Shown one piece after another: positions 44,428 through 64,000 of a stretch of 64,000 nucleotides of DNA; position 1 is the first letter of the stretch, and every line of letters starts with the position of its first letter. A program made the translations under genes and the position numbers. Under the pieces are notes generated by a model, which was not told where the DNA came from, ran no database searches, and saw only the letters and a list, made by a program, of their open reading frames with translations. The stretch lies in IMG/VR virus record IMGVR_UViG_3300038441_001119, positions 148,353-212,352 of that record. One strand, 5' to 3'.

Positions 44428-45420
44428 TTAGACTTCGAAGGCAACTTTGTTGACGCCTGCGACGTTCGCGATGGTCAGACCGATGATCTCTTCAGCAGAG
44501 ATGCGGAGAAGGTCCTTCTTACGCTCAACGTACATGGTGACGTCTTTCAGCGAGTACGCCTTACCGAGGAAGTCTGGCTCAACGAACTGGTAGACTTCGC
44601 CGTCAGCGATCAGATCGCGCTTCATCGTCGCGATGTGAGGGATGCCGAAGAATTTCAGTTCTGGGAGAGCCGAGAGACCTTCAAGGAAGAGGTCTTGCGA
44701 CTTGGTACCACCGACTTCGTCGTGATCGAAACCGAGGAATTCCTTAACCGTCTTGCGGTTGACAAGGAAGACGCCGTTGTTCAGTTCACGGTCTTCGAGG
44801 TGGGACAGAGTGTACTTGCGATAGTTGTCACGAGTGATGGTGACGCCGTTCGTTCCAACAGGCTCGTCCGCACCGCCATCGGTGTAGTCGAAGTTTTGTT
44901 GATAGCCAGCCGCGCCGTTTGCACCGCCCGGAGCACCCACGATGGTGTCAACCCAACCGATGAAGCGATTATCTTCATGGGTTTGGATGTCCTTGAGGGA
45001 GTTATCAACAATAACCTTTTGGAGGTCGATCTTCTTGTAAACCTTCAGCTCGTGAATGTTTTTGGTCCATTCAGGAGTTGCGATTTTGAAGAAGGTCGTG
45101 ACGAAACCTTGGCCACGGAAGTAGTGCGTCCGGTGAGTATCATTCAGCGGAAGCGAGACAGCGCCGGGTTGGTCAGGCTCCATTTCGTCGACAACGTAGA
45201 GGTTGTCTTCGAAGTCTGGGTGACGTCCGAGGTCGTTCGGTCCAACTGGTTTCATCGGGAGAATCCGGCGCATGAAACCGTTTTCACGGAGACGGCGACG
45301 AATTGCGCTACCAGCTGCATCAGATGCCGACTTGTTGAATCCTTCTGGAGCGTCCATGAGGGCGTCAAGAAGGTCCTTGTTGAAGGCTTCAGGATCTTGA
45401 ATAACAATTTTAGGGTCCAT
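44428..45420 (-). CDS. major capsid protein (HK97 fold, 330 aa)
   Basis: IRRRLRENGFMRRILP spine-helix region, FFKIATPEWTKNIHEL; order protease-scaffold-decoration-capsid followed by a terminator. Confidence 0.85.
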   Translation of the reverse strand: MDPKIVIQDPEAFNKDLLDALMDAPEGFNKSASDAAGSAIRRRLRENGFMRRILPMKPVGPNDLGRHPDFEDNLYVVDEMEPDQPGAVSLPLNDTHRTHYFRGQGFVTTFFKIATPEWTKNIHELKVYKKIDLQKVIVDNSLKDIQTHEDNRFIGWVDTIVGAPGGANGAAGYQQNFDYTDGGADEPVGTNGVTITRDNYRKYTLSHLEDRELNNGVFLVNRKTVKEFLGFDHDEVGGTKSQDLFLEGLSALPELKFFGIPHIATMKRDLIADGEVYQFVEPDFLGKAYSLKDVTMYVERKKDLLRISAEEIIGLTIANVAGVNKVAFEV

Positions 45421-46526: not shown

Positions 46527-47633
46527 TTACTTGTTCTTTTTGCTGATCTTTTCGAAGAGGCTCTTCGAACCAGAGATCAGGGTCTGGACAGAAGCCATCT
46601 TCACAGCTTCTTCTGGGGCTGGTGCGCCTTCGCCACCTTCTGGAGCAGGAGCGCCACCAGCGGCTGGATCACCACCTGCGCCACCTTCGGAGGCGAGGAG
46701 TTCCTGAGCGATTTGCGAAGCGGTGGCTTCGTCGAGTTCGCCAGAGGAAACAGCGGCTTCAAGGAGAGCGAGAATTTGCTCAAGGGACGGCTCTTCTGCG
46801 CCTTCGATGGTAGGCTCGCCACCCTCTTCTTCAGCACCCATCATGGCACCAGCGTCAGCAACGCCTTGGTCATATGCGCACTTTTCAAAGTAGGTAAGAC
46901 CATCACAGTTTGCTTCGTGGGCGAGGGCGACCTTAACAAGGTGCTCGCCTTCTGCAGGAGTGTCTGCCGAGTTATAAAGGTTTTCGAAATACTGTTCACG
47001 AGCAGCAGCATACTTGCGCATTTCTTCGTGTTCACGAGCAGCAGCAGCTTGCTTTTCGAGCATCTCGTTGTAGTCAGCCGAGGCTTGTTTGACGAGTTGA
47101 GCGGCCATTTCGCGACCGAGTTGCTTACGAACAAGCGGAAGGACCATGTCGATACCTTCTTCGGTTTCAAAGATAGCGGAAGCTAGCTTCATCATAGCGT
47201 CACCATCGAGGGTAAGCGCAGGCTCAGAAGGAGCAGCGGACTTGGTGGTAACAGGAGCAGCGGCGGGAGCAGGCTCGGTAACAGCAGGGGAAGCAGACTT
47301 GGTGCGAAGGTTCTTCACACGAGCAAGAATGTCACTCGCGGACTTCTTGACATTAGTTTGCTTGTCTTGTGCATCACCGTCAGCAGCCGAAGGAACGTCC
47401 TTACCAGTACGAGCTGGGTTGGTGTCCTTGTCAGTGAGGTCCTTACCTTCGCGGGAAGCGTTGGTAGGATCAGCTGGAAGGTTTTGCTTGTCTTTAGATG
47501 CGTCCGGATCGGTTGGGATACCAGCGGTGCCCTTTTCAGTCGGGTCACTTGCAGTAGCCGCAGCAGCCTTTTTGCTTTGAAGGCGAGCCGAGATACGGTT
47601 CTTGATGTCTGATTGGGTGACGGTATTAGCCAT
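46527..47633 (-). CDS. prohead scaffolding protein (368 aa)
   Basis: Low-complexity A/E/P/K protein between protease and capsid; 11 K-x-A motifs. Confidence 0.7.
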   Translation of the reverse strand: MANTVTQSDIKNRISARLQSKKAAAATASDPTEKGTAGIPTDPDASKDKQNLPADPTNASREGKDLTDKDTNPARTGKDVPSAADGDAQDKQTNVKKSASDILARVKNLRTKSASPAVTEPAPAAAPVTTKSAAPSEPALTLDGDAMMKLASAIFETEEGIDMVLPLVRKQLGREMAAQLVKQASADYNEMLEKQAAAAREHEEMRKYAAAREQYFENLYNSADTPAEGEHLVKVALAHEANCDGLTYFEKCAYDQGVADAGAMMGAEEEGGEPTIEGAEEPSLEQILALLEAAVSSGELDEATASQIAQELLASEGGAGGDPAAGGAPAPEGGEGAPAPEEAVKMASVQTLISGSKSLFEKISKKNK

Positions 47634-47691: not shown

Positions 47692-49143
47692 TTAACTGTT
47701 ACGATAAAAGTTCATCGCAACAAAGGTCTTAGCCAAAAGATCTTGGTCTTCAAACCCACGCTTAACCATGTCTTCAAAAGCAGCTACCTGATATGCAGCG
47801 TACGATTGTTCGAAGATGTCCAGAGAACGTGTCTTGTCATACTCAGCAAAGCCAGTATTAGCAGAACCGCTCTTGATTATGATAGTGATGGTCTTTTGTT
47901 GAGTAGGCTCCATCTTGCAGGAGAACTTCTGTGCCATCTCTTCCATGATACCATCGACTTCATCGCTGTCTTCTGGATCACAATCGGAAGCCTTCTTACC
48001 AAAGCCACTGAACAGAGGAGTCAATTCATCAAGCGTAGCATCGCACTGCTCGTCTTTGAGCATAGAGTTGTGGATGTTGGCCAGCTTGACAACTTCACCA
48101 TCGTAACCAGCATACTCGAACAACTCTTTCGCGGGAAGTAGTGCTGCGGTTTCAGCAAGCTTACCGAAGAGTGTACCGGGACGGAGGCTGGCAACTTTCT
48201 TGAAGTCACCATTGAGAGTGTTGTCTTGGCATGCAGTCTTCAACACGGAGAAGAAGTAGTGCCACTCAGGGTCGTTGCGCTTCTGTTTGAGATTATCAGC
48301 AAACCAAGTCTCTGCAGCAGCAAGCTTAACAAGGGTGTCCTTGAAATCAGAAATGGTACGAGTACGCACTCCCTCAAGTTCCGCAGCTAGATAGCCGGGA
48401 ATGATGATAGAACTGGTATCAGCAGAGGCCGCCTTCTTCATTTCCTCGTCCTCGGAGAACTTGTAAGCAATATAGTGCGCAATACGATCAGCAGGGCGTC
48501 CTACACGACTGATATCGAAGAACCGTGGCTCGTCGTTGATCGCAAAGGCGTACTTCTTGAAGGTAGGGATGTATTGTCCCATGTGTTTCTTCAAGTGGTC
48601 ACAATATGCAGCAGCACTCTTAGCCATGTTGCCGCAGCAGGAGCAACGGTCATGCTTGAGACGGGCGGACATACTGTAGGCAAGTTCTTTGCCTTGTTTA
48701 GCAAGTTCGTACTCTTCAGCAGCCTTCTTCTTGTGACCGTGCACCAGAAGTTCAACACGATCCAGCGGCTTGTTATAGGCAGACTTTACAATCGTACCAA
48801 TAGCAAGAGACGGATCTTCGTGGCGATGTTCCCGATAGAAGTGGCCGTGTTTAACAAAGGTGTCGTGGTACTTCTCCAGAGACGCACTGGGGAATGCGTC
48901 TTGGTTACGGTTAGGAGGGTACGTAGGCCACCCACCCAGCGCAATAACGTGCTGCATGAAGTGGTCTTTGTCAGGCTTATGCGCCTCGTAGTCCTCCTCA
49001 GTGAAGATGCTGTGGTAATCCGCAGAGGCGCTCTTCATCATACCCTTATTCTCAATGAGGGTATTGAAATGACCGCCAATCGCAGCAAGAAGGGATTCCT
49101 GCGCGTCCTGATAGATTACCTTAGTGAGTCCGTAATGATCCAT
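47692..49143 (-). CDS. prohead maturation protease (HK97-type Ser-His) with Cys/His Zn motif
   Basis: NRNQDAFP, YREHRHED (His), AYSMSA (Ser), CSCCGN...YCDH; position upstream of scaffold and capsid. Confidence 0.8.
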   Translation of the reverse strand: MDHYGLTKVIYQDAQESLLAAIGGHFNTLIENKGMMKSASADYHSIFTEEDYEAHKPDKDHFMQHVIALGGWPTYPPNRNQDAFPSASLEKYHDTFVKHGHFYREHRHEDPSLAIGTIVKSAYNKPLDRVELLVHGHKKKAAEEYELAKQGKELAYSMSARLKHDRCSCCGNMAKSAAAYCDHLKKHMGQYIPTFKKYAFAINDEPRFFDISRVGRPADRIAHYIAYKFSEDEEMKKAASADTSSIIIPGYLAAELEGVRTRTISDFKDTLVKLAAAETWFADNLKQKRNDPEWHYFFSVLKTACQDNTLNGDFKKVASLRPGTLFGKLAETAALLPAKELFEYAGYDGEVVKLANIHNSMLKDEQCDATLDELTPLFSGFGKKASDCDPEDSDEVDGIMEEMAQKFSCKMEPTQQKTITIIIKSGSANTGFAEYDKTRSLDIFEQSYAAYQVAAFEDMVKRGFEDQDLLAKTFVAMNFYRNS

Positions 49144-50182: not shown

Positions 50183-51751
50183 TTAACCGATTTTGTATTT
50201 CTTCTCGTCGAGCTTCTGTTGCTCCACTTCCGACTGGGTTTGCTTCTTGTTGATGTCCACCAACTGATCGTAGGTGTGAGGAGCAACGCCGTCATATTGG
50301 ATAGCTTCACGAAGAGTGTAGCTCATGAGGTTAGGATCAGCCATCAGCGCAGGGTTCGCGCTTGCAAGGCTGTTGTAGATACTGACGACCCGGTCAGGAT
50401 CTGCTTCCGAGAGGATTGGGTCAGTGAGGATAGCCTTCTGTAGGAGAAGAGCTTTCTGAAGATCACTGCGGGTACCGTCAATAGCCATACGACGTTTGTC
50501 CATACCGCCAGCTGGGGTAGACATACGACGCTTCAGCCACTCGTAAGCAGGAGTGGTTTTGGAATCAAGCCATTCAACACCTTTGTCGAGCTTCTTGAGA
50601 GCAGGATCGAAGTCAGTCTTAGGAGCAGGAGTAGCCCGTCGCTCATGTTGCGCATCAGTATCCGTAAACCTTACATTGGAAGGTGCCGGACCTACGCCCG
50701 ACTGAGGATTGACTTCATCGGGGATAGGAGGACCTTGACGTGGCTCCGGTGTAGCGCCTAATGCTGACCTCCAGTCTTTTTTCTCCGGAGCAGGTTCACC
50801 CTTAGCTGGCTCTTTGGACTTGGTAATCTTTGGATTGCTCTTAGGAGGTCCATAGTGTACGTAGCCCTTAGGATCGAAATCTTGTGACTCTGCTCCGAGG
50901 GTAGCCCGTGCAATGTCTTCGTCAGTGAATGGCTCACCGTCGTCTTCTTCTTCCTCATCAGCAGCTTCCTTGAGCATGGACTCACACTCAAGATACTCAG
51001 TGATCTTGCTTTCAAGTTCCGTGATCAGATCAAGCTTACCAGTCGTGTCACGGGTGATCTTGACCGATGCCTTCTTCTCCATAGGGAAGCGATCATACTG
51101 AACCATCGAATATTCCTTACCAAGCTGCCATGCAATATGTGCCAGAGCTTGTTCATTGGCGTTCTCACAGGAAAGCGAATCACGCTCCCAAGCAGAATAC
51201 AGGGAAGGATTGAGATACACTTCGTGAGCCAGTTTCTTCATGGACTCTGAGATCTCGTCACGGACATTACCCATGTAGTCTTCCACACCTTGGATGAAGA
51301 GTTTGTCATTTTTCTCTGCTTCAAGACGTGCGGATCTCTCGGCAATCTCACGCAGAGACGTGGTAAACTCATCGCCTACAAAGGCAGAGGCACTCTTAAC
51401 GGAACCGTCCTCGTCATTGAACATGGCCTTAAGATTAGGCACACGGTAGACGTCGTGGTTCACTGAAACGTGCGATGCTTTCTTGACCGTCGCTCCCGGT
51501 GCTTGGTAAGAAGTATACTTTTCGATTACTTCGTCCACTGGGATCAGCGAGAAGGTACCGCCACGAGAAGCCGACTTCTTCATGTACGATACCGTTTTGG
51601 CCGTATTGAAAACCTGACACAGACGCTCCAATTGCGCGGGAGCAAGTTGGTTGTCCTGTGCGTACTTAATAAGAACATCACCGGGATCACCGGATTTGTT
51701 GAAAGTCGACACAAGGGACTCAATGATAGAGGCTGCCTTGGAGTGGGTCAT
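50183..51751 (-). CDS. K-x-A-rich prohead core/inner-body protein (522 aa)
   Basis: Seven K-x-A motifs in the N-terminal half; acidic/Pro-rich linker; own promoter. Confidence 0.6.
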   Translation of the reverse strand: MTHSKAASIIESLVSTFNKSGDPGDVLIKYAQDNQLAPAQLERLCQVFNTAKTVSYMKKSASRGGTFSLIPVDEVIEKYTSYQAPGATVKKASHVSVNHDVYRVPNLKAMFNDEDGSVKSASAFVGDEFTTSLREIAERSARLEAEKNDKLFIQGVEDYMGNVRDEISESMKKLAHEVYLNPSLYSAWERDSLSCENANEQALAHIAWQLGKEYSMVQYDRFPMEKKASVKITRDTTGKLDLITELESKITEYLECESMLKEAADEEEEDDGEPFTDEDIARATLGAESQDFDPKGYVHYGPPKSNPKITKSKEPAKGEPAPEKKDWRSALGATPEPRQGPPIPDEVNPQSGVGPAPSNVRFTDTDAQHERRATPAPKTDFDPALKKLDKGVEWLDSKTTPAYEWLKRRMSTPAGGMDKRRMAIDGTRSDLQKALLLQKAILTDPILSEADPDRVVSIYNSLASANPALMADPNLMSYTLREAIQYDGVAPHTYDQLVDINKKQTQSEVEQQKLDEKKYKIG

Positions 51752-54099: not shown

Positions 54100-56367
54100 T
54101 TAAAGTGGTGCTGATCCCTCAATGTCGCTATTCCGCTTGATTAGTTCAAGCAAAATATCACCGAAAGATTTAAATTGTGAAACGAGGTTGTTCTCGATGT
54201 TCGTCATGTCATCCGAACCGTAGAGCTTCTCGAAGTCCGAAGGTTTCCAGTAGAACAAGAAGATAAGCCGCCCGAAATGGTCCAGCCCTTCCTCAAGCTT
54301 TGGAATGTACTTGGCGATCATCGAGGCACTGTCGTACGTCGAAATGAGTAGACCAGTGACACCCGGATCAATCAGATTGGCGACCCCACCTTGTTGTGCC
54401 ATCTGTGCAAGCTCTTCAGGAGACGATCCCAGAAGCATGTCGTCGGTGAATCCAGCCTTCTTACCATCCTTGGACACAAACCGTGACTCAGGTCCTTGAT
54501 CCTTTGGATTTGGATCATAGAAGTCACCAAGACGGCGGTTAGGTGGAACAGGTTGATCAGTTTCCGACTGCAGGGCGAACTGCTGTGGATTCTCCATAGG
54601 AACATTCAGATCCTGATCGTAATCAGTCTGCCATTCAGGAGTATTCACAATACGGATGTTCGTTGCACGCTTGACCAGTTCAACACGATCAACGAGGAAC
54701 TCAACAGAACCTTTCTCGCTGAGAAGGTCCATCATTGCGGTCACTTCTGCACCGGGAATGAGGAAAGAGTGGGCCACTTTGACAGCAGCGGTTTCCACAT
54801 CGTCCACTTCATCCCAATCCTTGTCGTTGAGCTTGATCTTAACGGCTTTGTTACCGGTTTCGTCCTTACCTTTCAGGGATACCTTGTCGATACCCTGATC
54901 GTAGAAGAACTGCCACAGTTGCTCTTGACCGCCCAGCTTATGCGGGCATTCCTTGGCATCATGTCGCTCACTGTCGTACTTACATACTTCAGTAGCCACA
55001 GGAAGGAACTTCACATCACCATTGAATACATTGGACTCACTCTTGCTGAGATAGCGGTCGTAGGAGATCACCGGAGAGTTCTCATTGCGGTAAGCAACGG
55101 CTCCATTGGTAAGATTGATCACAAGAACCCCATCAGAACGCTTCTTGGTGGATGCGACATGGAAGGGAGCTGATACAGAACCATTGCGGGTGTTGACCGC
55201 GACGTTACCACCATTGGAAGGTTTGTCTTTCAGTTCCTCATCGAACGCCCACTGTTGCTTCTTGTCCTCAAGCGGAGAGCCAAGGATACGGGTGACATAG
55301 TCTTTGTAGTAGTTACCATCCTTGAAGATGACAACTTTGGAGAGACCTTGCGAAGACTGGGTGTAGCCAGAACGTGGTGCACAGTCCAGAGAGCAGCAAC
55401 CATCACGTTCCATCTGGAATCCAACAAAGGCTTTTCGTTCCTTACCATCAGAGCAGATCACATTGTAGAAGCCCGGCTCAGACACTTCTGCAGCACAGTC
55501 TTCCACATTGGCGATCACTGGTTTGAGGTCCAGCTCCTTACGTGCATCAACAAGCATCCATCCACGCTTATAACCAAGATGTTTGTCTTCGCTGGAAGCA
55601 TCTTTAATCAGTTCAAACTCACCTGTGTAGAGAGTGAGGTCTGCATCAGGGAGAATGGTTTCGGAAGCCTTCTTGATCGTGTAAGCCTCTTCTGCGGTAG
55701 GAGTAGGTGCCCATACTTCTTCGTCAAGGGACACAACAGCCTCTGCGAATGGGAAACTGATTTCAATGGCATGAGCAAGCTTCTCCATGGCGTCGTCTTC
55801 ATACAGAAGGAAGTCGCGAAGCATTGGTGCTGGAGCAGCTGACTTGGTGCCAGATGCATTCTTCTCCATCTCAGAGAAGACATCTTCCCAAGCAACCTTG
55901 ATGTCCTCCGCCGCACTCTTGTTCATCCAAGGATTGGCAAGTCGCTCAAGGCGCATACCGGGGCGCATCTTGGAGGTCATATCTTCCGATTGACCCTGAC
56001 CTGCAACCTCCGTCGAATAACGGGAAACAAGGTGTTGCGTCCACTCTGCGGTAAGCGGTTTGAAGAGCTTCTTGTTATGCTCGTACAGAAGCTCGGTACC
56101 CTTGACGTCTCCAGTGATGAAGAAGCAGGGAACAGAGAAAAGATTCTTTGCAATACGGAAGGCGAAGATACCTGCCATCTTCGTATTGTCATCATTCGAG
56201 TAAACCACTTCGAATCCCAGACGGTGCGGATCATCCAGAAGAGGACCTGCCTTTTGGGAGATGTAGTTGTAAGCGAGGTCCATGAAAGCACGCTCGACGT
56301 CCTCGGCATATCCGCCTGCGGCCATCTGTGCTGCTGCTTTCTTCCAGTCGTAGTCAAGGATGCTCAT
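54100..56367 (-). CDS. large K-x-A-rich head-associated protein (755 aa)
   Basis: Nine K-x-A motifs (MNKSAA, MEKNAS, MEKLAH, LIKDAS, LVKRAT and others); no portal signature recognised. Confidence 0.55.
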   Translation of the reverse strand: MSILDYDWKKAAAQMAAGGYAEDVERAFMDLAYNYISQKAGPLLDDPHRLGFEVVYSNDDNTKMAGIFAFRIAKNLFSVPCFFITGDVKGTELLYEHNKKLFKPLTAEWTQHLVSRYSTEVAGQGQSEDMTSKMRPGMRLERLANPWMNKSAAEDIKVAWEDVFSEMEKNASGTKSAAPAPMLRDFLLYEDDAMEKLAHAIEISFPFAEAVVSLDEEVWAPTPTAEEAYTIKKASETILPDADLTLYTGEFELIKDASSEDKHLGYKRGWMLVDARKELDLKPVIANVEDCAAEVSEPGFYNVICSDGKERKAFVGFQMERDGCCSLDCAPRSGYTQSSQGLSKVVIFKDGNYYKDYVTRILGSPLEDKKQQWAFDEELKDKPSNGGNVAVNTRNGSVSAPFHVASTKKRSDGVLVINLTNGAVAYRNENSPVISYDRYLSKSESNVFNGDVKFLPVATEVCKYDSERHDAKECPHKLGGQEQLWQFFYDQGIDKVSLKGKDETGNKAVKIKLNDKDWDEVDDVETAAVKVAHSFLIPGAEVTAMMDLLSEKGSVEFLVDRVELVKRATNIRIVNTPEWQTDYDQDLNVPMENPQQFALQSETDQPVPPNRRLGDFYDPNPKDQGPESRFVSKDGKKAGFTDDMLLGSSPEELAQMAQQGGVANLIDPGVTGLLISTYDSASMIAKYIPKLEEGLDHFGRLIFLFYWKPSDFEKLYGSDDMTNIENNLVSQFKSFGDILLELIKRNSDIEGSAPL

Positions 56368-56639: not shown

Positions 56640-57800
56640 TCAGTAGGAAGCAGTCCCGTCAGGTCGGAAATACATGGCTCCAACGCGTTGTTGAGGAGTA
56701 GTAGCTCCAAAACGATATGGTGTCGAGGTGTTATTTGCGCCTTGCCCGAATTGGCTGCGCATTTGCTGATACTGACTCCAACCTTGGTTAGCTGCGTACT
56801 GCGGTGCAATCAACGCACCTGCACGCTCAATGAATCCAAGATTGTTGAACTTGTTCTGCATTCCTTCCAGAGCAAGGTCGTTACCAGCCATTTGACCACC
56901 CATATAAGCAGCATCACGGCTACCGCCATAGCCAGCCATCACACCCATACCTGCAAACGCCGCAGGGACACCCCAACTATTCACATTATGGATCTGCCTG
57001 CGTACTCCAGTGGGGAGAGCTTTGTACTTGTTGCCAACAGCCTTGAAAGCACCAGCAACAGGTTTAAATATCGAACCACTCTTGATCCGACCATAAGCAC
57101 GGTCTCGGAAGAACTCTGGAGAGAACTGCCCATCCATGAACTGTCGGGCAGTTGAAGGGTTGCTTGCCTGCGAACCATAACCATAACGACTCAGACCATT
57201 GATTCCACCATTGTAGAGGAAGTTGTATCGGTCTTTCATCCCAGACTGCGAATAGGCGCCGAGAACATTGCTTACAGCAGTGTCTGCTCCTTGCAAAGCA
57301 CCTCTGCGTACGTCTCCTTCCGCTCTACCTGAAAGACCATAACCAATTTGACCAATACGGCTGTACGGGTCAACATTGACGTCTTCACCAGTAAGACCCT
57401 TAATCGCCAGAGGAAGCCCTGTGTAGGTCGCAACAGCACCTGTGATACCTCCTGCTGCCCTAGGGTCAAACAAGAGGGTTCTAGGGGCATTGTAGAGCGT
57501 TCCAGTGACAGCACCTGCAGCCCTGAGACCACCGCGTGCCAAAGGATTCTGGAAACTGTTTACATAGTTGTTCCAATTCTGATTGTAACCACGGAACTTC
57601 TGTCCTGCAGCTACAGCATCACCTTTGGCTGCATTGAACTTGTTCGCATAGGTGGAACCCGGAACATGTGTAGTTCCCATAGCGGGTTTCCAGCTCTTTG
57701 CATTGGCATGAGCAAACTCTCGCTCACCACGGGCAAGGGTTTGCATACCCCTACCATGGAAAGCATTGATGAATCTGGAGAAACCACCGGGGGCTGGCAT
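56640..57800 (-). CDS. Gly/Ala-rich probable ejection protein (386 aa)
   Basis: G/A/N/Q/Y-rich with hydrophobic GxxxG segments; lies in the cargo-gene run. Confidence 0.55.
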   Translation of the reverse strand: MPAPGGFSRFINAFHGRGMQTLARGEREFAHANAKSWKPAMGTTHVPGSTYANKFNAAKGDAVAAGQKFRGYNQNWNNYVNSFQNPLARGGLRAAGAVTGTLYNAPRTLLFDPRAAGGITGAVATYTGLPLAIKGLTGEDVNVDPYSRIGQIGYGLSGRAEGDVRRGALQGADTAVSNVLGAYSQSGMKDRYNFLYNGGINGLSRYGYGSQASNPSTARQFMDGQFSPEFFRDRAYGRIKSGSIFKPVAGAFKAVGNKYKALPTGVRRQIHNVNSWGVPAAFAGMGVMAGYGGSRDAAYMGGQMAGNDLALEGMQNKFNNLGFIERAGALIAPQYAANQGWSQYQQMRSQFGQGANNTSTPYRFGATTPQQRVGAMYFRPDGTASY

Positions 57801-57803
57801 ATA

Positions 57804-59411
57804 TTAAACGAATGGAAGACCTGCGTAGCGACCAACGATACCGTGGCGACCTTGTTGACGGATGCTAGGGTCTTGGAGACCTTGACCCATTATGCCTCGA
57901 AGCTGCGAAGGATCAAACTCATAGTTACCCATCAGACGTCCAATGAAACCGGTGTTCTGTGCTTGATTCTGCGCAAGACCATAGCCTTGTCCAAGACCTT
58001 GGTCCAGACCAGTCGCATAACCGGCTTGGTTGCCTTTCTCATACCCAGTTCCACGACCAAGTGCCCACAGACCTGCTCCACCTGCTCCAATAGCAGTGTT
58101 CTTCATCCATGGAGTCTGGTTGAAGGTACGTCCAGCTCTGCGAAGACCTGCGTAACCTTTACCAATCATGGAAGTGGGACGAAGACCTCTGGAACCAGCT
58201 CCAAGGAGACCAGCGACATTGGCGGATTTAATGAAAGAGGACTTGGTCATCGGATTGTTCTTTAACTCTGCAACTCTAGCACGGATGTCGTCAGGAGACA
58301 ATTGGCGAATTGCGGAAATGACGGGATCGGTAAGGTTGTTCTTCAGACCAGAGTTTCCAATGGAGTCTTCAGCGAATCTGAGACCACGTGCAGTGTTCTC
58401 TCTAAGCGCAATGTCCTGCAGCTTGGCTTTGTCGCGATTCATATACGGACCGAGGCTCTCGAATGCTGGCATCTTTATATCCTTGAGGAAATCAGCATTC
58501 AGATTACCCTGAGTCCGAAGGCGTTCGCTCAGAGAAGGTCCTTCTGACTTGCGAACAAGCATCTGTGCAATAGGCGACATCTGCGAAACCTTATCGGTCA
58601 TCGCCGTATGTGCGCCTGTTGTAGCCTTGTTCAGCTTATCGGAGATGTCGTTCTTAGCGTCATTGCTTCTGCGATACGCAAAGCCACCACCAAGACCAGC
58701 ACCCAATGCACCTCCTCCAAGAGCACCCATAAGGAGCATCTTGAGACGCTTGCCTTTGTACTTCTCGTCAGTGAGGGAAGTGAGACCACCACCAATAGCT
58801 CCAAGACCTGCACCTGCAATACCACCAGCAAGACCTCCTTTGAAAGCCATGTCAGCTGGGTTGAAAGGATGCACGTTTACGTCAGCTTGTTTTTTCATAG
58901 CGTCATGTTGATTGTTACGATATGCGTTAATGGCGCTGGAACCGATCCCGCCAGCAAACATACCACCAAGACCGGATAGCTCACCGACACTACGGCTCAT
59001 GGCTTTCATCATCAATGCCTGTCTTCGCTTACCTAAACGGCCCCTGCCCATTTGCATCCATCCTTGTGGATTCTTTTGAATAGTTCGGTGCACAACGGAT
59101 GGTCCGAGGTATTTACCAAGGAGTTTACCAATAGCATGACCACCACCTACGCCAAGGCCAGCAATCATCCCGTTACCAACAGGAGACTTGTTCTCATCAG
59201 AGCGTAGCTGGTTGATCCCTTCCATAGCCCCACCTGCTCCAGCGCCCCATAGAGCACTGTTACCAACTTGAATACTAGGATCACCGACAAGATCCTTCAG
59301 ACCCTTGAACGGGTTGCGGAGTGGTGTCTTTGGTTTAGTAGCAGCGCGAGAAGCGAAGTCCTCTATACGAGCCAGTGTACCTGCTGATTTAATCAACTTA
59401 GAAGTTTTCAT
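57804..59411 (-). CDS. modular glycine-zipper internal-head polyprotein (535 aa)
   Basis: Three Gly-zipper modules opened by MKTSKLIKSAG, MKKQAD and MTKSSFIKSAN. Confidence 0.6.
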   Translation of the reverse strand: MKTSKLIKSAGTLARIEDFASRAATKPKTPLRNPFKGLKDLVGDPSIQVGNSALWGAGAGGAMEGINQLRSDENKSPVGNGMIAGLGVGGGHAIGKLLGKYLGPSVVHRTIQKNPQGWMQMGRGRLGKRRQALMMKAMSRSVGELSGLGGMFAGGIGSSAINAYRNNQHDAMKKQADVNVHPFNPADMAFKGGLAGGIAGAGLGAIGGGLTSLTDEKYKGKRLKMLLMGALGGGALGAGLGGGFAYRRSNDAKNDISDKLNKATTGAHTAMTDKVSQMSPIAQMLVRKSEGPSLSERLRTQGNLNADFLKDIKMPAFESLGPYMNRDKAKLQDIALRENTARGLRFAEDSIGNSGLKNNLTDPVISAIRQLSPDDIRARVAELKNNPMTKSSFIKSANVAGLLGAGSRGLRPTSMIGKGYAGLRRAGRTFNQTPWMKNTAIGAGGAGLWALGRGTGYEKGNQAGYATGLDQGLGQGYGLAQNQAQNTGFIGRLMGNYEFDPSQLRGIMGQGLQDPSIRQQGRHGIVGRYAGLPFV

Positions 59412-60163
59412 TGTTTGTCAAAGCCACCCATGCGCTCTTTGATGGAGTGAAGTAGTTGTGGAGCAGCCATACTCAGAGCATAAGTAGGAATACCAACAAA
59501 GGAACGAAGGGAAGAGGTACGATTGTGACCGTGATTGCGCATCATACGGTAACCTCTGCGTGAAGCATCAAGTTCTGAGAGCATGGTAACTCCCAGACCT
59601 GCGGTACCAATATTAGCTCCATTTTGGCTACCTTCATTGGTAGCAGCAAAGCCAGTTATACCTGCACCAAGACCGCCGACATATTTACCAATGGCATTCG
59701 CCCATCCAAGAGCTTTACCTCCATGAGCGTGTCCCATTTCATGCGCAAGGACAGCAGGATCGGCGTGTCTACCAAATGGTTTCTTTGGTCCCATAAACAT
59801 GGACATGAACGGGTCATCGCTACCGTAGTAGCCACTATGGCCTTTGGTGTAAGGCATATTTACAGAGCCGTCACCGGGATTGTAATGAGGCGGCTTACTG
59901 CCAAAGTTAACAGGTGTCCCCTCTTTCTTTGCCCGTCCTACCAGACTATCAAACGTAGACTGCGCCTGCGCCCCTCTATCGACGTCCTTGATGATATGCC
60001 GTCCGTAGATGTGATTGGGTATACTGATCAACTTCTCAGCTATAGGAGTACCCGCAAGTCCCCAACGCCAATCCAATCCTTCATTGTCCCCACGCAGAAG
60101 ATCACCTACAAAACCACCACGTGGGGCTTCATTTGCTCTCTTGATGAACTCAGATTTTGTCAT
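59408..60163 (-). CDS. HEXXH zinc metallopeptidase (YugP/Zn_peptidase_2-like) with CTS-like leader
   Basis: AVLAHEMGHA, hydrophobic segments, ELDASRRG third-ligand motif; N-terminus MTKSEFIKRAN. Confidence 0.7.
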   Translation of the reverse strand: MTKSEFIKRANEAPRGGFVGDLLRGDNEGLDWRWGLAGTPIAEKLISIPNHIYGRHIIKDVDRGAQAQSTFDSLVGRAKKEGTPVNFGSKPPHYNPGDGSVNMPYTKGHSGYYGSDDPFMSMFMGPKKPFGRHADPAVLAHEMGHAHGGKALGWANAIGKYVGGLGAGITGFAATNEGSQNGANIGTAGLGVTMLSELDASRRGYRMMRNHGHNRTSSLRSFVGIPTYALSMAAPQLLHSIKERMGGFDKQ

Positions 60164-60167
60164 AGCT

Positions 60168-60214
60168 AAAAAATAACGCCCCAGTGGTGACCCACCAAAG
60201 TCACACCGGGGCGT
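60168..60214 (-). terminator. intrinsic terminator-like hairpin
   Basis: Long stem ACGCCCCGGTGTGAC...GTCACCACTGGGGCGT followed by TATTTTTT. Confidence 0.7.
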
Positions 60215-60245
60215 CAGTTATACACCACCTACCAACGCCCTGAAA

Positions 60246-60584
60246 TTAGCTCAGGACAAGGAAAGTAACTTTTGTAGCAGCAGTGGCGTTCGCGTTACCG
60301 GTAATGGTAAAGGAGCCATCAGCAGGAACCACGGATTTGAGATACAGGAGAGTACCATCGGTGGAGTTCAGAGTAGCTAGAATACGGGAACTGGAGGTAA
60401 CAAGGCTATTGGTCACGACCACAGAGGCAGCGCCGATAGCGATTTGAACCTGACCAGAGTATTCGTTGATTGTTTGGGCACCAGTCGTATCCGCATTGGT
60501 ACCAGTGTAGAGACGTTCGTTGATCAGATTGGCAAGAGCCGTGATGATCCGAGACTTAGTGCGAGGAAGGACAGGAAATGCCAT
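60246..60584 (-). CDS. small beta-rich virion protein (decoration/fibre-like, 112 aa)
   Basis: SVVVTNSLVTSSSRILAT...GSFTITG beta pattern; bracketed by its own promoter and terminator. Confidence 0.55.
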   Translation of the reverse strand: MAFPVLPRTKSRIITALANLINERLYTGTNADTTGAQTINEYSGQVQIAIGAASVVVTNSLVTSSSRILATLNSTDGTLLYLKSVVPADGSFTITGNANATAATKVTFLVLS

Positions 60585-60621: not shown

Positions 60622-61218
60622 TTAAAGTCGCATATCCCTTTCAATGCGGCGGTAATTGGGACCGTAGGCAGGGGCTTTCTCTTTTGGTTTCCCTATGACT
60701 CCACCTCTGCTGTTATGGGAGACAACGCGGAACTCACCGTCTTCCCAGAGAACCCATGGAAGTCCACTATCACCTGCTCGGACTCCTTCACCGCTCTTAT
60801 GGAAATCACTGACATATTCGGAGCTGTTCCTGTTCTCAAGACGAGCGAGAATGAACTCACCATCTTGTGTAGCGATTGCAATAGGTTGTCTGTTCTTAGG
60901 AGAGAGTGCAATGTTCTTGCGAACCTTTACTGGGAAGTCAGGCTCCACAAAACACCAACTGGTATCATTACCGAGATCCTTCACAAGCATGATGGTGTGC
61001 TCAGTGACAGTACCATCGTTCTGCACAGTGTTCACAGTCTGCCCGACACTTGGGTGCAGATGAGTGGCAGTAACCATCTCATTGGAAGAGCGAACCCATC
61101 CCTTGAGGTGCGGGTACGCGTTGGAGCGGACAATGAAGTCCTTCTTGAGGTTCTTCCATTTGACCTTTGGTTCACGCAGGGAGTAGAACCAATTCAGTAG
61201 TTTCTTTTTAAGACTCAC
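60622..61218 (-). CDS. trypsin/chymotrypsin-fold serine protease (198 aa)
   Basis: Catalytic triad motifs MVTATH, GNDTSW, GDSGLP, plus VVSHNSRG. Confidence 0.7.
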   Translation of the reverse strand: MSLKKKLLNWFYSLREPKVKWKNLKKDFIVRSNAYPHLKGWVRSSNEMVTATHLHPSVGQTVNTVQNDGTVTEHTIMLVKDLGNDTSWCFVEPDFPVKVRKNIALSPKNRQPIAIATQDGEFILARLENRNSSEYVSDFHKSGEGVRAGDSGLPWVLWEDGEFRVVSHNSRGGVIGKPKEKAPAYGPNYRRIERDMRL

Positions 61219-63236
61219 AGGGCAGAGAGTGCCAGAGCAGACGGATGAGTCAACATTATAAATGCGCTCTTTGTCTGTTCCTTCTTCTCGATGCTCTTCT
61301 GAATGGCGTACTCCTGTTTGTAGGCATCTTGTGGTTTCTTGTGCTTGCCGAGAATACGTTTACCATCCTTGGTGTACAGAACCCACTGGTTGCTTCCCAC
61401 TTGTTTAACCACAGCGGACTTCACTACATTGTCTTTGTAGAAGTTATCCATCTTGGAGAGATCAATACCGAACTTTGGTGCATAAGCGTATGGCTTGCTG
61501 TTGCTCCACGTCCTTGGATTCCACCATTTCCTTGTAGGATGTGCTGTCACAGGATAACCGGCATTTGGTAAGGCTTTGGTCCACACTTTGGCTGCGTCGT
61601 CACTTGTAGCGCCTCCTCTGTCAGAGTAGAACCACTTCCCTGCATTCCCTGCCTTGTAATCCCTGTATGCGTCCCGAATAGCGGCTCCGTACATCTTCTT
61701 ACCATAGCCCATGCCTCTCAACTTACCACTAAGACGCGACGATGAGATGTAAGTGTTGTTGTCTGCTTTATTGGTGAACGAAGCTAGGTGTCCTTTATGG
61801 ATGTCACCTACTGAAAGCTCATTGGTACGCCAGTTGGTGAGCCTGTTGGGATTAACAGGAGCTTCTGAGACCATTCTACGAATAAGACCAGCTCTTGCAG
61901 CTGCTTTCACCATTGATGCATTCAGATCGTCGTCAGTAGCTCTTACAGCAGGGATCTTCTTCCTGCCTTCGTCATTCGCCCGGTGGTATCTGTGTCTGCC
62001 ATCCACAAGGCTACCGTCTGGTCCAATAATGACAGGCTTTTTCGTATCCACTTTGTCATAACGTTTCTTGGAGTAACCAGTACGTTTGGAACGGTCTGGC
62101 CTTGGAATGTCTGAAAGCTTTGTGTGTACAGACTTCTGTTTCTTGAGCCTGTCATTCAATGCAAGGATGTCAATGTTGCGACCATCCTTCATCACTTTGG
62201 TATGCGTGGTGGTTGTCTTGACGTCAGCTGACTTTAACCGATCATACCCTTCGTAACCGGCGTACCCTGTTCCTGCCAAGCCTGCTGCACCAATAGGAGC
62301 ATCTCTATACCAGAATTTGTTCCTTGCCTTACGCAAAGCATCCATACCACTGATACCAGCTTTGGCAGCAGCTCTATATTCTTCTGAGCCTACTTGTCCT
62401 TTGATACCAGATCTACTGGCAACACGATCCATGATGCGGTCTCGTTCTGCCCTAACTTTTGCCCCATTTGCCGCTCTAGTACTACTGTACATCGCATTCA
62501 TGATTTCCTCACTAGCTCTGTATCGTTCCTCGCCCGGCAGCCATCCATCTAAACGGCGATCATTTGGAGGTTTTTGGAAATATCTAGGGGTGTGTTTTCT
62601 TTTACCGAACCCTTCAAATGGTGCATCAAAAGCGATACTGTCTCGACGACCGCCCGTATGGTGTTTTGATGGTCCATTTAATCGAGTAAAGTTCATCACA
62701 GGAACTCCCCAATCAGACTGTAAAGAACGTTGATCGGTTGTCCAAGAGTTGTCTGCATGAATAGTGGAGGAGTGTCTTGGATCCCCCATCTCAGTGCGCA
62801 TCTTACCTTTACGATCAAACTTGGAAGCCTGATCAAGTTGCTTACTGATGTCCTTAGACTGAGAGCCGAACAACTTAACCTTATCCAACTTCTTGTCCAC
62901 ATTATTGCGCCCAATAATGTCAGCAATAGATGGTTTCAATTTAGAACGAATTCCTTCTGCCTCCTTCAATGCGGGAGACAGTCTGGTAAGCAATTCTCGG
63001 AATCCAGCTTGCTTATTCATCAACACACCAATAGGAATGTCCCTGCGATTGGTATGTATCTTGAACTTGGTAGGAGTATGGGTCAATCCCATGTATTTAC
63101 CTTTAGGATCATCCACAAGCCAGTCCTTCGGAGATGCCTGCATTTGTTTACGCAGGATATCCGCCTTGGCTCCGTACTGCTTCTGATCAGACAACTGTTT
63201 GGCTCTCAGCAGCGCATATAGAACTGCTGGTTCCAT
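61215..63236 (-). CDS. polyvalent protein with ParB-like and GNAT domains (673 aa)
   Basis: KPVIIGPDGSLVDGRHRY (ParB N-terminal), LRGMGYGKKMY (GNAT motif A); domains separated by K-x-A motifs. Confidence 0.7.
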   Translation of the reverse strand: MEPAVLYALLRAKQLSDQKQYGAKADILRKQMQASPKDWLVDDPKGKYMGLTHTPTKFKIHTNRRDIPIGVLMNKQAGFRELLTRLSPALKEAEGIRSKLKPSIADIIGRNNVDKKLDKVKLFGSQSKDISKQLDQASKFDRKGKMRTEMGDPRHSSTIHADNSWTTDQRSLQSDWGVPVMNFTRLNGPSKHHTGGRRDSIAFDAPFEGFGKRKHTPRYFQKPPNDRRLDGWLPGEERYRASEEIMNAMYSSTRAANGAKVRAERDRIMDRVASRSGIKGQVGSEEYRAAAKAGISGMDALRKARNKFWYRDAPIGAAGLAGTGYAGYEGYDRLKSADVKTTTTHTKVMKDGRNIDILALNDRLKKQKSVHTKLSDIPRPDRSKRTGYSKKRYDKVDTKKPVIIGPDGSLVDGRHRYHRANDEGRKKIPAVRATDDDLNASMVKAAARAGLIRRMVSEAPVNPNRLTNWRTNELSVGDIHKGHLASFTNKADNNTYISSSRLSGKLRGMGYGKKMYGAAIRDAYRDYKAGNAGKWFYSDRGGATSDDAAKVWTKALPNAGYPVTAHPTRKWWNPRTWSNSKPYAYAPKFGIDLSKMDNFYKDNVVKSAVVKQVGSNQWVLYTKDGKRILGKHKKPQDAYKQEYAIQKSIEKKEQTKSAFIMLTHPSALALSAL

Positions 63237-64000
63237 TATGACATTCTCTGCATATAGTTCATGACCATATGAGGATTAGCGTTCTTGCCGTAGTTGAACA
63301 TAATGTCATTCACAACCGTAGGACTACTATATGAAGTAGAACCAGCACCTGCGTTCATCAAACCAATGTTCTTACGTGCTATTGCCTGATCCTTGAAATG
63401 ATAAGGACGCTGATGCAGATATGACTGCTTGGCTGCTTGAGAAAATTGTCCCATTTTACGCGTATCCCAAAGATGCTGCACATTGTCATTACGTAATGGT
63501 CCAGTAAGCTTACCCAGACCTTTATGCATTAACGTTCCGCCAAGTTCCGGATTAACATTTCGACCGAAGCTACTCAACACACCCCACCTATTGGCACTCT
63601 TGGTCAACCCAACAGACTGCATGATCTGCTTACCGGGAGAAATAGGTTTCTTCACTGGAGGCACTGTACCAAACGGAGAGTTACCTGTAACGCCTTGGTA
63701 AGCAGCCAAACCAACAGGAGCAGCAACAGCGGTACCCAGTCCAACATGCCCCAAGTTAATGTTTTGATGCCAAGGAGCCTTCGCAGGTGCGGCATTAACG
63801 TACATACTGTCCGGAAGAGTTTTGTTCTGGATAGCCCTCAGCATTGGGCTATTCTGCGGGTACAGTTGCGTCACACCGGGAGTGCTGGCAGGAGGTTGCC
63901 ATGCAGGAGTCCTAGGAAGTGGTGGCCTGTGCAGGACACCTGAGGGAGCCTTTGGAGGACGGACTCTTGAGAGCCACTTGCCGCGATTCACTTTACCAAT
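63236..64000 (-). CDS. Pro/Gly-rich probable internal-head protein, 5' end probably outside the window
   Basis: Frame is open up to the window edge; LTKSAN motif and GLGTAVAAPVGLAAY hydrophobic segment. Confidence 0.5.
   Translation of the reverse strand: MGKVNRGKWLSRVRPPKAPSGVLHRPPLPRTPAWQPPASTPGVTQLYPQNSPMLRAIQNKTLPDSMYVNAAPAKAPWHQNINLGHVGLGTAVAAPVGLAAYQGVTGNSPFGTVPPVKKPISPGKQIMQSVGLTKSANRWGVLSSFGRNVNPELGGTLMHKGLGKLTGPLRNDNVQHLWDTRKMGQFSQAAKQSYLHQRPYHFKDQAIARKNIGLMNAGAGSTSYSSPTVVNDIMFNYGKNANPHMVMNYMQRMS

What the first reader, a model, noticed from the sequence alone, without database searches (positions are those of the whole stretch)
58218..60163. T4 CTS-like 10-residue leaders, including one buried inside a polyprotein
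Seen: 59408..60163 begins MTKSEFIKRAN and 57804..59411 begins MKTSKLIKSAG. The latter also contains an internal MTKSSFIKSAN (58218-58250) that opens its third glycine-zipper module. MDKTEFKDFAA (43110 gene) and MSEKLEMEKFAA (49145 gene) are looser versions. Established: the T4 capsid-targeting sequence MKTYQEFIAE directs internal proteins into the prohead and is then clipped off. Inference: these are capsid-targeting leaders ending in this phage's K-x-A site. The internal copy is either a gene-fusion scar or an internal start. Such a tag could be used to load foreign proteins into the capsid.
Basis: partly seen in the sequence, partly recalled or inferred. Interest (0 to 1): 0.7.

Follow-up and report, generated by a model that had tools for sequence, protein, structure and literature searches.

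The report
Shared cleavable leader on phage head proteins
An uncultivated soil jumbo phage puts the same 10-residue leader (M-T-K-S-x-F-I-K-x-A) in front of several genes beside its portal gene and at a junction inside a fused gene. The leader ends in K-x-A, which comparative evidence marks as the cutting site of this phage clade's T4-like head protease, so it is most likely a clip-off, possibly capsid-targeting, tag like the one phage T4 uses.

Summary
The contig is a circular-type assembly, and just past the window end lie two more copies (MTKSAFIKRAN, MTKSDFIKLAN). That gives five leaders where about 0.001 are expected by chance, plus a truncated remnant at the C-terminus of the 673-aa protein.

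- **Level of conservation:** copies differ at synonymous sites, so selection acts on the peptide.
- **Relatives:** the leader recurs in metagenomic relatives, at gene starts and at module junctions.
- **Internal copy:** homologues of the 535-aa protein's third module exist as stand-alone 105-200 aa genes, most of which start with the leader. The internal copy is therefore a fusion junction.
- **Protease:** the phage's head protease has the T4 gp21 fold (Z 12.8).
- **Cleavage motif:** across six head proteins in 5-6 relatives, K-x-A is by far the most positionally conserved spaced pair (29 sites, next best 7). The Glu-type motifs of T4 and phiKZ are not conserved.

The "K-x-A site" is thus well supported by inference, and the leader ends in it. 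Actual cleavage, virion location and targeting are untested because the phage is uncultivated. The two "looser versions" at 43110 and 49145 are not members. I rate this a new variant of a known kind: a CTS-like propeptide with a gp21-family protease of altered apparent specificity.

The parts
60131..60163 (-). Leader MTKSEFIKRA|N of the 251-aa gene
   Evidence: It scores 27.3 bits against a profile built from relatives only.
59408..60163 (-). 251-aa leader-bearing protein with HEMGH and an invariant SELDASRRGY, a zincin-like candidate metallopeptidase
   Evidence: All 7 family members carry K-x-A-(S/N/G/F) just upstream of the conserved domain. Structural matches to ArdC, BlaR1 and M48-like domains are weak only.
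59379..59411 (-). Diverged leader MKTSKLIKSA|G of the 535-aa gene
   Evidence: It scores 12.7 bits, not significant alone. The MKTSEFIKSAA variant occurs three times in relative L012.
57804..59411 (-). 535-aa three-module glycine-zipper protein, a candidate polyprotein
   Evidence: Module 2 (about residues 169-321) and module 3 (about residues 388-535) each have stand-alone homologues.
58218..58250 (-). Internal leader MTKSSFIKSA|N (residues 388-398) at the module 2/3 junction
   Evidence: It scores 26.0 bits. Module-3 homologues P0003, P0008, P0011, P0012 and P0014 begin with the leader.
58884..58892 (-). K174-Q175-A176, a candidate module 1/2 junction (..HDAMKKQA|DVNVHPF..)
   Evidence: It aligns to the N-terminus ..HAAFLKTA|FDLHPY.. 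of stand-alone module-2 homologues (phmmer ranges; sequences). The pairwise BLAST alignment is weak.
63236..64000 (-). 3' part of a 269-aa leader-bearing gene. Its start MTKSDFIKLAN lies across the contig junction at G000:C1:156-185.
61254..61274 (-). Truncated leader remnant TKSAFIM at the C-terminus of the 673-aa protein
   Evidence: In relative L001 the homologous domain continues ..AIQKSMEKSAFIKQAA.. into a further HExxH module.
61413..61421 (-). K606-S607-A608 directly before the VVKQ..WVLYTKDG mini-domain of the 673-aa protein
   Evidence: The same domain follows FIKRA| in L002 and MEKSA| in L001.
47692..49143 (-). Prohead protease with a T4 gp21 fold (residues about 4-217) and a roughly 250-aa C-terminal extension
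   Evidence: phrog_18299; Foldseek hit to 5jbl with probability 1.0; VIA Z 12.8; 321 metagenomic homologues.
49024..49035 (-). K37-S-A-S40, a candidate N-terminal autoprocessing site of the protease
   Evidence: K37 and A39 are nearly invariant in 40 homologues. The site lies in a loop with pLDDT below 50, residues 34-43.
48424..48435 (-). K237-A-A-S240, a candidate C-terminal autoprocessing site of the protease
   Evidence: K237, A239 and S240 are invariant in 40 homologues. The site lies in the disordered stretch 221-245.
44428..45420 (-). Major capsid protein with K30-S-A-S33 (window 45322..45333) near its N-terminus
   Evidence: phrog_2522; sequence. The K-x-A-S is conserved in 5 of 5 relatives at the same alignment column.
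46527..47633 (-). Scaffold-like acidic, Ala-rich protein with multiple K-x-A-(S/A) sites
   Evidence: Eight sites are positionally conserved in at least 3 of 6 relatives.
50183..51751 (-). 522-aa head-module protein with 4-5 conserved K-x-A-S sites
54100..56367 (-). Portal-like 755-aa protein. This is a positional assignment with no family match. It has conserved K-x-A-(S/A) sites in its N-terminal third.
56640..57800 (-). Conserved 386-aa Gly/Asn/Gln-rich protein between the leader cluster and the portal gene. It has no leader.
   Evidence: the L005 417-aa homologue.

Best explanation
The 10-residue peptide M-(T/N/K)-(K/T)-S-x-F-I-K-x-A is an N-terminal propeptide shared by a variable set of accessory head proteins encoded next to the portal gene.

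Proposed mechanism:
- It ends in K-x-A, the recognition motif of this clade's T4 gp21-fold prohead protease. Cleavage would most likely follow the Ala.
- The leader would therefore be clipped off inside the prohead.
- Where two such genes have fused, as in the 535-aa protein, the retained internal leader lets the protease release the same modules that relatives encode separately.
- The extra conserved residues K-S-x-F-I are not shared by the other presumptive substrates (capsid protein, scaffold, portal, protease itself). They probably dock the cargo to the assembling core, as the T4 capsid-targeting sequence does.

Shown here: the repeat and its conservation, the fusion junction, the protease fold, and the exceptional conservation of K-x-A.

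Inferred: cleavage, its exact position, virion location and targeting.
For: **The leader is real and conserved**
- There are five copies where about 0.001 are expected, with synonymous-site differences between them.
- A profile from relatives alone recovers four own copies at 20-27 bits.
- 33 leader instances were found in own and related contigs, next to portal homologues wherever the contig was long enough to show the portal gene.

**The internal copy is a junction**
- Module-3 homologues are stand-alone genes and most start with the leader.
- Other relatives fuse module 3 to different upstream partners, in all four cases through a leader.

**The protease**
- Fold match to T4 gp21: Foldseek probability 1.0, Z 12.8 over 147 of 164 residues.

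**K-x-A is the clade's special motif**
- Of all 400 spaced residue pairs tested over six head-protein alignments, K.A is conserved at 29 sites. The next best pair has 7, and A.E, S.E, G.E, L.E and I.E have 0-4.
- K[SK]A[SA] occurs at 4.39 per 1000 aa in the head module against 0.24 elsewhere (odds ratio 18, p = 3e-14).
- K237, A239 and S240 are invariant and K37 and A39 nearly invariant in 40 protease homologues. Both sites lie in the two disordered loops that flank the protease domain.
- The capsid protein has K-x-A-S at residue 30-39 in 5 of 5 relatives.

**The leader's K-x-A corresponds to those sites**
- In the 251-aa family, members that lack the leader carry GKSAS, SKAAS, TKRAN or NKKAG at the corresponding place upstream of the conserved domain.
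- K-x-A directly precedes the same mini-domain in three proteins.

**Precedent**
- The T4 CTS MKTYQEFIAE is a roughly 10-residue leader cleaved by gp21 that suffices for encapsidation (PMC8442874, PMC5694885).
Against: - There is no proteomic or experimental evidence. The phage is an uncultivated soil metagenome contig.
- Virion location rests on gene position alone. None of the leader-bearing proteins matches a known family.
- The residue after K-x-A in leaders is N, G, A, F, L or S, whereas the head-protein sites have S or A. In this genome the leader cluster has no K[SK]A[SA] at all.
- Three relatives' leaders have Ser instead of Ala at the last position.
- Retention of Met in 7 of 9 internal copies fits internal translation starts, or recent fusion, better than a pure protease site.
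- The canonical leader is missing in the more distant relative L011, although K-x-A sites persist there. The K-S-x-F-I part is therefore not essential clade-wide.
Confidence: 0.55

Rival explanations
1. The leader is only an extended protease-recognition site or propeptide with no targeting role. Cargo would enter the prohead through other parts of the proteins.
For: Distant relatives keep only a short N-terminal stretch ending K-x-A-(G/Q), without K-S-x-F-I: L011 YLLKQAG and YMAKEAG, L009 LTKSAQ. The 251-aa family keeps K-x-A but not the leader. In SPN3US not all head proteins have propeptides (PMC10052503).
Against: K-S-x-F-I is strongly conserved in 33 instances on otherwise unrelated cargo. 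It is absent from the 29 conserved head-protein K-x-A sites. This points to a function beyond P4-P1 recognition.
Confidence: 0.2
2. The internal copy works as an internal translation start. Module 3 would be made separately from the in-frame ATG at 58250, so no proteolysis is needed at that junction.
For: 7 of 9 truly internal leaders in the family retain Met at the leader's first position. Genes in this genome do not use Shine-Dalgarno sequences (SD-like 4-mers in 12% of upstream regions against 19% in the background). An internal A-rich, G-poor context could therefore initiate like any other start.
Against: Two internal copies have lost the Met (LQKSAFIKSAA, AKKSSFIKFAG) yet keep the rest of the motif. 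That argues for a peptide-level role at junctions. There is no transcript or ribosome data. This rival is not exclusive of cleavage.
Confidence: 0.15
3. The leader serves a function unrelated to the capsid, for example a membrane- or secretion-related N-terminal signal on glycine-zipper membrane proteins and a metalloprotease acting in lysis, superinfection exclusion or host takeover.
For: The cargo is rich in GxxxG glycine zippers, and one protein has HExxH. No virion evidence exists.
Against: The leader is short, charged and lacks a hydrophobic core. It occurs internally at module junctions. The genes lie between RNAP-like or virion-module genes and the portal gene in every relative long enough to show it. 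The leader ends in the head-protein motif.
Confidence: 0.07
4. The conserved sequence is mainly a DNA-level recombination cassette that lets cargo genes be swapped or duplicated. The peptide would be incidental.
For: Within L008, L012 and L005, paralogous leaders plus about 12 nt upstream are identical or nearly identical at the DNA level. This indicates recent duplication or gene conversion.
Against: In the window genome and between relatives, the leaders differ at synonymous sites while the peptide is kept. A profile at the protein level finds them across contigs whose portal proteins are only about 40-48% identical to the window's.
Confidence: 0.03

Closest known systems
T4 capsid-targeting sequence (CTS, MKTYQEFIAE) of internal proteins IPI-III and Alt
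   Same: It is a roughly 10-residue N-terminal leader shared by otherwise unrelated, fast-evolving head cargo. It ends in the cleavage motif of a gp21-fold prohead protease. Some copies even share M-K-T and E-F-I with T4, for example L012 MKTSEFIKSA against T4 MKTYQEFIAE (PMC8442874).
   Different: - It ends in K-x-A rather than I-A-E.
- It also occurs internally at junctions of fused modules.
- The cargo is glycine-zipper proteins and an HExxH protein rather than small basic internal proteins.
- Targeting and cleavage are untested.
- Ungapped profile similarity to the T4 CTS is nil (-10 bits).
Propeptides of phiKZ, 201phi2-1 and SPN3US head and ejection proteins cut by gp175/gp245
   Same: It is a jumbo phage with split multisubunit RNAP genes and a gp21-family protease that carries a C-terminal extension and likely autocleaves. 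Many head proteins carry repeated motif sites. Paralogous cargo shares identical N-termini, as SPN3US gp53 and gp54 do (PMC5694885).
   Different: Those enzymes all cut after Glu in (S/A/G)-x-E (PMC5694885). Here the conserved motif is K-x-A-(S/A) and Glu-type motifs are not conserved. Those propeptides are mostly longer than 100 residues; here the leader is 10. No sequence homology to those phages was detected.
Herpesvirus assemblin maturation and release sites, (V/L/I)-x-A|S (from my own knowledge; not retrieved here)
   Same: The protease fold is related (HCMV protease Z about 6). The motif has Ala followed by Ser or Ala, with a variable residue before the Ala.
   Different: Lys, not a hydrophobic residue, occupies the position two before Ala. 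The relationship rests on fold only. The cleavage position in the phage is inferred.
N-terminal leader of Staphylococcus phage 80alpha capsid and scaffold proteins, removed by host Prp (from my own knowledge)
   Same: It is a short conserved N-terminal peptide on several head proteins that ends ..F-x-A| before a small polar residue.
   Different: That leader mimics ribosomal protein L27 and is cut by a host cysteine protease. Here a phage gp21-type protease and a K-x-A motif are implicated. No Prp link was examined.

Membership tests
T4-type capsid-targeting sequence (CTS) | Short (10-20 aa) N-terminal peptide shared by several otherwise unrelated head-module proteins | tested here: met
   There are five copies in four genes of one cluster beside the portal gene, and 33 instances across relatives.
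T4-type capsid-targeting sequence (CTS) | The phage encodes a gp21-fold prohead protease | tested here: met
   AF2 model at pLDDT 82.6; Foldseek hit to 5jbl with probability 1.0; VIA Z 12.8 over 147 of 164 residues.
T4-type capsid-targeting sequence (CTS) | The leader ends in the motif that the protease's other substrates carry | tested here: met
   The leader ends K-x-A. K.A is the top conserved spaced pair in six head proteins (29 sites against 7 for the next). The 251-aa family has canonical KSAS or KAAS at the equivalent place. That the motif is the cleavage site is itself an inference.
T4-type capsid-targeting sequence (CTS) | The leader is removed by the protease in the prohead | not testable with these tools
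   The contig is an uncultivated metagenome assembly, so there are no proteomic data.
T4-type capsid-targeting sequence (CTS) | The leader is sufficient to load a foreign protein into the capsid | not testable with these tools
   This needs a cultivated relative or a reconstituted assembly system.
T4-type capsid-targeting sequence (CTS) | Sequence relationship to MKTYQEFIAE | tested here: inconclusive
   M-K-T and E-F-I are shared with some copies if one gap is allowed (PMC8442874). The ungapped profile score is -10 bits, and the peptide is too short for a homology test.
gp21/gp175 (S77-type) Glu-specific prohead proteases | Assemblin-like fold with conserved Ser/His | tested here: met
   Fold as above. 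H106 and S157 are invariant and H65 nearly invariant in 40 homologues. These residues were not mapped onto the gp21 catalytic residues.
gp21/gp175 (S77-type) Glu-specific prohead proteases | Substrates cut after Glu in (L/I/S/A/G)-x-E | tested here: not met
   A.E, S.E, G.E, L.E and I.E are conserved at 0-4 sites against 29 for K.A. The sites flanking the protease domain have invariant or nearly invariant K, A and S residues and no conserved Glu. This is indirect, because no cleavage was measured.
Protease-processed polyprotein | Modules joined in one ORF exist as separate genes elsewhere, with the junction motif at each boundary | tested here: met
   Modules 2 and 3 have stand-alone homologues, and different fusion partners occur in P0005, P0007, P0009 and P0010, in each case joined through a leader.
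Protease-processed polyprotein | The junction is cleaved | not testable with these tools
   No protein-level data are available.

The most novel reading that the evidence does not exclude
A whole clade of uncultivated jumbo phages (more than 300 protease homologues in metagenomes) uses a gp21-fold prohead protease whose specificity has switched from the Glu-type sites of T4 and phiKZ to K-x-A|S/A, a herpesvirus-like Ala|Ser cut. Its 10-residue M-x-K-S-x-F-I-K-x-A leader would be a portable capsid-loading and release tag that is a deep relative of the T4 CTS (shared M-K-T..E-F-I). If so, the packaged or ejected proteome of these phages could be read directly from sequence.
Probability: 0.3. Interest if true: 0.75.

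Novelty: new variant of a known kind. Interest (0 to 1): 0.62.

Why it matters
If correct, it gives three things.

1. **A sequence rule.** The leader plus K-x-A-(S/A) sites would predict which proteins are packaged and processed in a large, uncharacterised clade of soil, freshwater and other jumbo phages.
2. **A specificity change.** It would be an apparent example of the T4 gp21 / herpesvirus assemblin protease family changing its cleavage specificity from Glu to Ala. This bears on how head-maturation codes co-evolve with dozens of substrates.
3. **A candidate tag.** It would be a minimal tag, with its cognate protease, for loading and releasing cargo in phage capsids.

It also shows how cargo genes fuse and split freely when every module carries its own cleavable leader.

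Tried and rejected
**Searches that found nothing useful**
- DNA and tblastn searches of GenBank phages with the locus, the portal-like protein and the 251-aa protein gave no match.
- IMG/VR scans with the 251-aa protein and with the module-3 alignment found no relatives.
- The metagenome scan returned only the source contig itself.
- A degenerate DNA pattern for the leader in IMG/VR gave 28 single hits. Many are not in ORFs, and by my rough estimate the number is about what chance would give.
- Pfam and PHROGs found nothing for any leader-bearing protein.
- A profile of the protease against PDB sequences gave no hit; only the fold comparison worked.
- The fold search with the 251-aa model gave only weak, non-significant metalloprotease-domain matches.

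**Computations that gave no answer**
- Complex prediction with the protease domain plus the first 30 residues of the 251-aa protein returned no verdict (score 0.04). It counts neither for nor against binding.
- A Shine-Dalgarno test for the internal start is not possible, because this genome does not use SD sequences.

**Ideas rejected**
- A DNA- or RNA-level element as the cause of the repeat: synonymous sites differ.
- The 43110 and 49145 N-termini as leader copies.
- The phage's own HExxH protein as the processing enzyme: I thought this less likely, because the K-x-A-S sites flank the gp21-fold domain itself and lie in the capsid and scaffold proteins.
Full report
**Observation.** The window is the last 64 kb of a 212,352-bp single contig whose first and last 140 nt are identical, so it is a circular-type assembly. 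It corresponds to a JGI metagenome contig of 212,409 bp found in soil runs.

Reading across the junction adds two copies. MTKSDFIKLAN is the real start of the ORF that runs off the window end (269 aa). MTKSAFIKRAN starts the next gene upstream (144 aa). The gene order on the minus strand is:

- 144-aa gene (leader)
- 269-aa gene (leader)
- 673-aa gene (ends in a truncated ..QTKSAFIM.. remnant)
- 198-aa gene
- 112-aa gene
- a terminator-like hairpin
- 251-aa gene (leader)
- 535-aa gene (leader plus one internal leader)
- 386-aa gene
- 86-aa gene
- 755-aa portal-like gene

Five strict matches stand against about 0.001 expected. Codons differ at synonymous sites, so the peptide is what is conserved. 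A profile made only from relatives' leaders scores the four MTKS copies at 20-27 bits, against a null 95th percentile of 17.2. MKTSKLIKSAG scores 12.7 bits. The two 'looser versions' score 3.0 and 5.8 bits, which is background. An independent Logan contig is identical across 57700-60300.

**Relatives.** Nothing in GenBank phages or IMG/VR resembles this phage. An exhaustive HMMER search with the 535-aa protein found that its third module (residues about 388-535) occurs as stand-alone proteins of 105-200 aa. Five of these begin with the canonical leader: MNKSEFIKS.., MNKSAFIKQAG, MKNSEFIKAAS (two) and MNSAAFIKEAA. P0002 has a looser N-terminal version, and P0004, P0013 and P0022 lack it.

Other relatives fuse module 3 to different upstream partners, in each case through a leader:

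- P0005: ..SMNKSAFIKTAS..
- P0007: MSKANFIKSAS.. and ..KKSSFIKFAG..
- P0009: ..KMKKSEFIKQAR..
- P0010: three copies

Module 2 also has stand-alone homologues, whose N-termini (..AAFLKTA|FDLHPY..) align to ..AMKKQA|DVNVHPF.. in the 535-aa protein (the pairwise alignment is weak).

Contigs carrying portal homologues (40-48% identity) show the same layout, with several leader genes beside the portal gene. L008 has three consecutive MTTSEFIKTAN genes. L012 has MNKSEFIKTAF and three MKTSEFIKSAA genes. L010, L005, L006, L002 and L001 have further copies. In total there are 33 instances, 20 at called gene starts and 13 internal to called ORFs. I judge four of the 13 to be probable mis-called starts, which leaves 9 truly internal copies. 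A more distant relative (L011, 33% portal identity) lacks the canonical leader and has only short N-termini ending K-x-A-G.

**The protease and its motif.** The 483-aa protein at 47692..49143 hits a head-maturation-protease PHROG and has 321 metagenomic homologues, many on contigs of 100-215 kb. Its AF2 model (pLDDT 82.6) matches T4 gp21 best: Foldseek probability 1.0 and Z 12.8 over 147 of 164 residues. HCMV assemblin follows at Z about 6.

In 40 homologues, K37 and A39 are nearly invariant and K237, A239 and S240 are invariant. These two K-x-A-S sites fall in the only two low-confidence loops flanking the protease domain, residues 34-43 and 221-245. That is the pattern expected for autoprocessing sites.

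The capsid protein (phrog_2522) has FNKSAS at residues 28-33. K[SK]A[SA] occurs at 4.39 per 1000 aa in the head module against 0.24 elsewhere (odds ratio 18, p = 3e-14), and reversed control patterns give zero.

As an unbiased test, I counted for all 400 spaced residue pairs 'a.b' how many alignment positions are conserved in at least 80% of 5-6 relatives over six head proteins. K.A has 29 such sites and the next best pair has 7. The Glu-type pairs used by T4, phiKZ and SPN3US (A.E, S.E, G.E, L.E, I.E) have 0-4. All characterised enzymes of this family cut after Glu (PMC5694885). This clade therefore appears to have a different code, K-x-A-(S/A). By analogy with herpesvirus assemblin's Ala|Ser sites (my own knowledge), cleavage after the Ala is the most likely position.

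**Linking leader and motif.** Every own leader ends K-x-A. In the 251-aa family (HExGH and SELDASRRGY invariant), members without the leader carry GKSAS, SKAAS, TKRAN or NKKAG at the corresponding place just upstream of the conserved domain. In three proteins K-x-A directly abuts the same mini-domain: VVKSA|VVKQ in the 673-aa protein, MEKSA|VVKK in L001 and FIKRA|VVKQ in L002. The leader's K-x-A therefore behaves like the head-protein sites. The K-S-x-F-I part is specific to the cargo leaders and absent from the capsid, scaffold, portal and protease sites. This is the argument, by inference only, for an added docking or targeting role like that of the T4 CTS (PMC8442874, PMC5694885).

**Fusion scar or internal start.** Fusion is demonstrated by the stand-alone homologues. 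However, 7 of 9 truly internal copies keep Met at leader position 1. That fits recent or recurrent fusion, or continued use as a start codon. This genome does not use Shine-Dalgarno sequences, so no sequence test is available. Two internal copies that have lost Met but keep the rest of the motif argue that the peptide matters at junctions. The two readings are not exclusive.

**Caveats.**
- No protein-level data exist for this phage or its relatives.
- Virion location of the cargo rests on synteny alone.
- The residue after K-x-A is more varied in leaders (N, G, A, F, L, S) than in head proteins (S or A).
- Three relatives' leaders end in Ser rather than Ala.
- The structure of the 251-aa protein gave only weak metalloprotease-domain matches.

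**Verdict.** The finding is real, extended and largely well interpreted. It is a CTS-like cleavable leader family tied to a gp21-fold protease with an apparently new K-x-A specificity, and it is used both at gene starts and at polyprotein junctions. I rate it a new variant of a known kind, with moderately high interest.

Noticed in passing
window 63861-64000 and G000:C1:1-140: The contig's first 140 nt repeat its last 140 nt, which indicates a circular or permuted assembly. Because of this, the window's last ORF and two further leader genes continue at the contig start.
   Followed up: yes
window 47692-49143: The gp21-fold protease family (321 metagenomic homologues) has conserved K-x-A-S sites flanking the catalytic domain and a roughly 250-aa helical C-terminal extension. 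Its apparent specificity is non-Glu, unlike T4, phiKZ and SPN3US.
   Followed up: partly
window 61215-63236: The 673-aa protein begins with a roughly 60-aa domain (LLRAKQLSD..GLTHTPTKFKIH) and ends with a roughly 45-aa domain (VVKQ..WVLYTKDG..QEYAIQKS). In relatives these are separate or differently ordered, leader-flanked pieces (P0005, L001, L002). Its middle has a DGRHRYHRA stretch that looks ParB/sulfiredoxin-like to me, but Pfam gave no hit. The only match was phrog_17560, of unknown function.
   Followed up: partly
G000:C1:4721-8197 and 81642-83561: The phage has split multisubunit RNA polymerase genes. A beta'-like piece interrupted by an intein (Hint plus LAGLIDADG) lies about 4 kb upstream of the leader cluster in transcription order. 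A beta-like piece (Rpb2_6, E = 1e-54) lies elsewhere. Relatives show the same RNAP-then-cargo-then-portal order.
   Followed up: partly
G000:C1:83568-85427, 116147-117595, 38290-39999: Proteins outside the head module carry several K-[SK]-A-[SA] sites. The 619-aa protein next to the RNAP beta-like gene has five. They may be further packaged and processed proteins, possibly virion RNAP parts.
   Followed up: no
whole genome (G000): Start codons are not preceded by Shine-Dalgarno motifs (12% against 19% in the background). Upstream regions are A-rich and G-poor. This suggests a host with SD-independent initiation, such as Bacteroidota, but that is inference only.
   Followed up: partly
L008:3850-4530, L012:11090-12140, L005:1864-2450: Within single relatives, paralogous leaders and about 12 nt upstream are identical or nearly identical at the DNA level. 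This points to recent tandem duplication or gene conversion of cargo genes.
   Followed up: partly
window 60179-60200: A terminator-like hairpin with a T-run lies on the minus strand about 15 nt upstream of the 251-aa gene's ATG, after the 112-aa gene. That gene has a weak match to the K1-lyase C-terminal domain (below the Pfam cut-off).
   Followed up: no
window 41918-42724 and 49145-50179: There are further glycine-zipper proteins in the head module: a 268-aa protein with weak DUF6861/DUF3482 matches, and the 344-aa protein. They lack the leader. The 344-aa protein's L008 homologue starts MDKKAN, a possible minimal K-x-A propeptide.
   Followed up: no
L037:920-948 and L050:1773-1801: Two unrelated small IMG/VR contigs encode proteins that start MNKREFIK(R/K)A.., followed by a sequence that looks like a capsid-protein N-terminus to me. 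This may be chance or convergence and was not examined.
   Followed up: no
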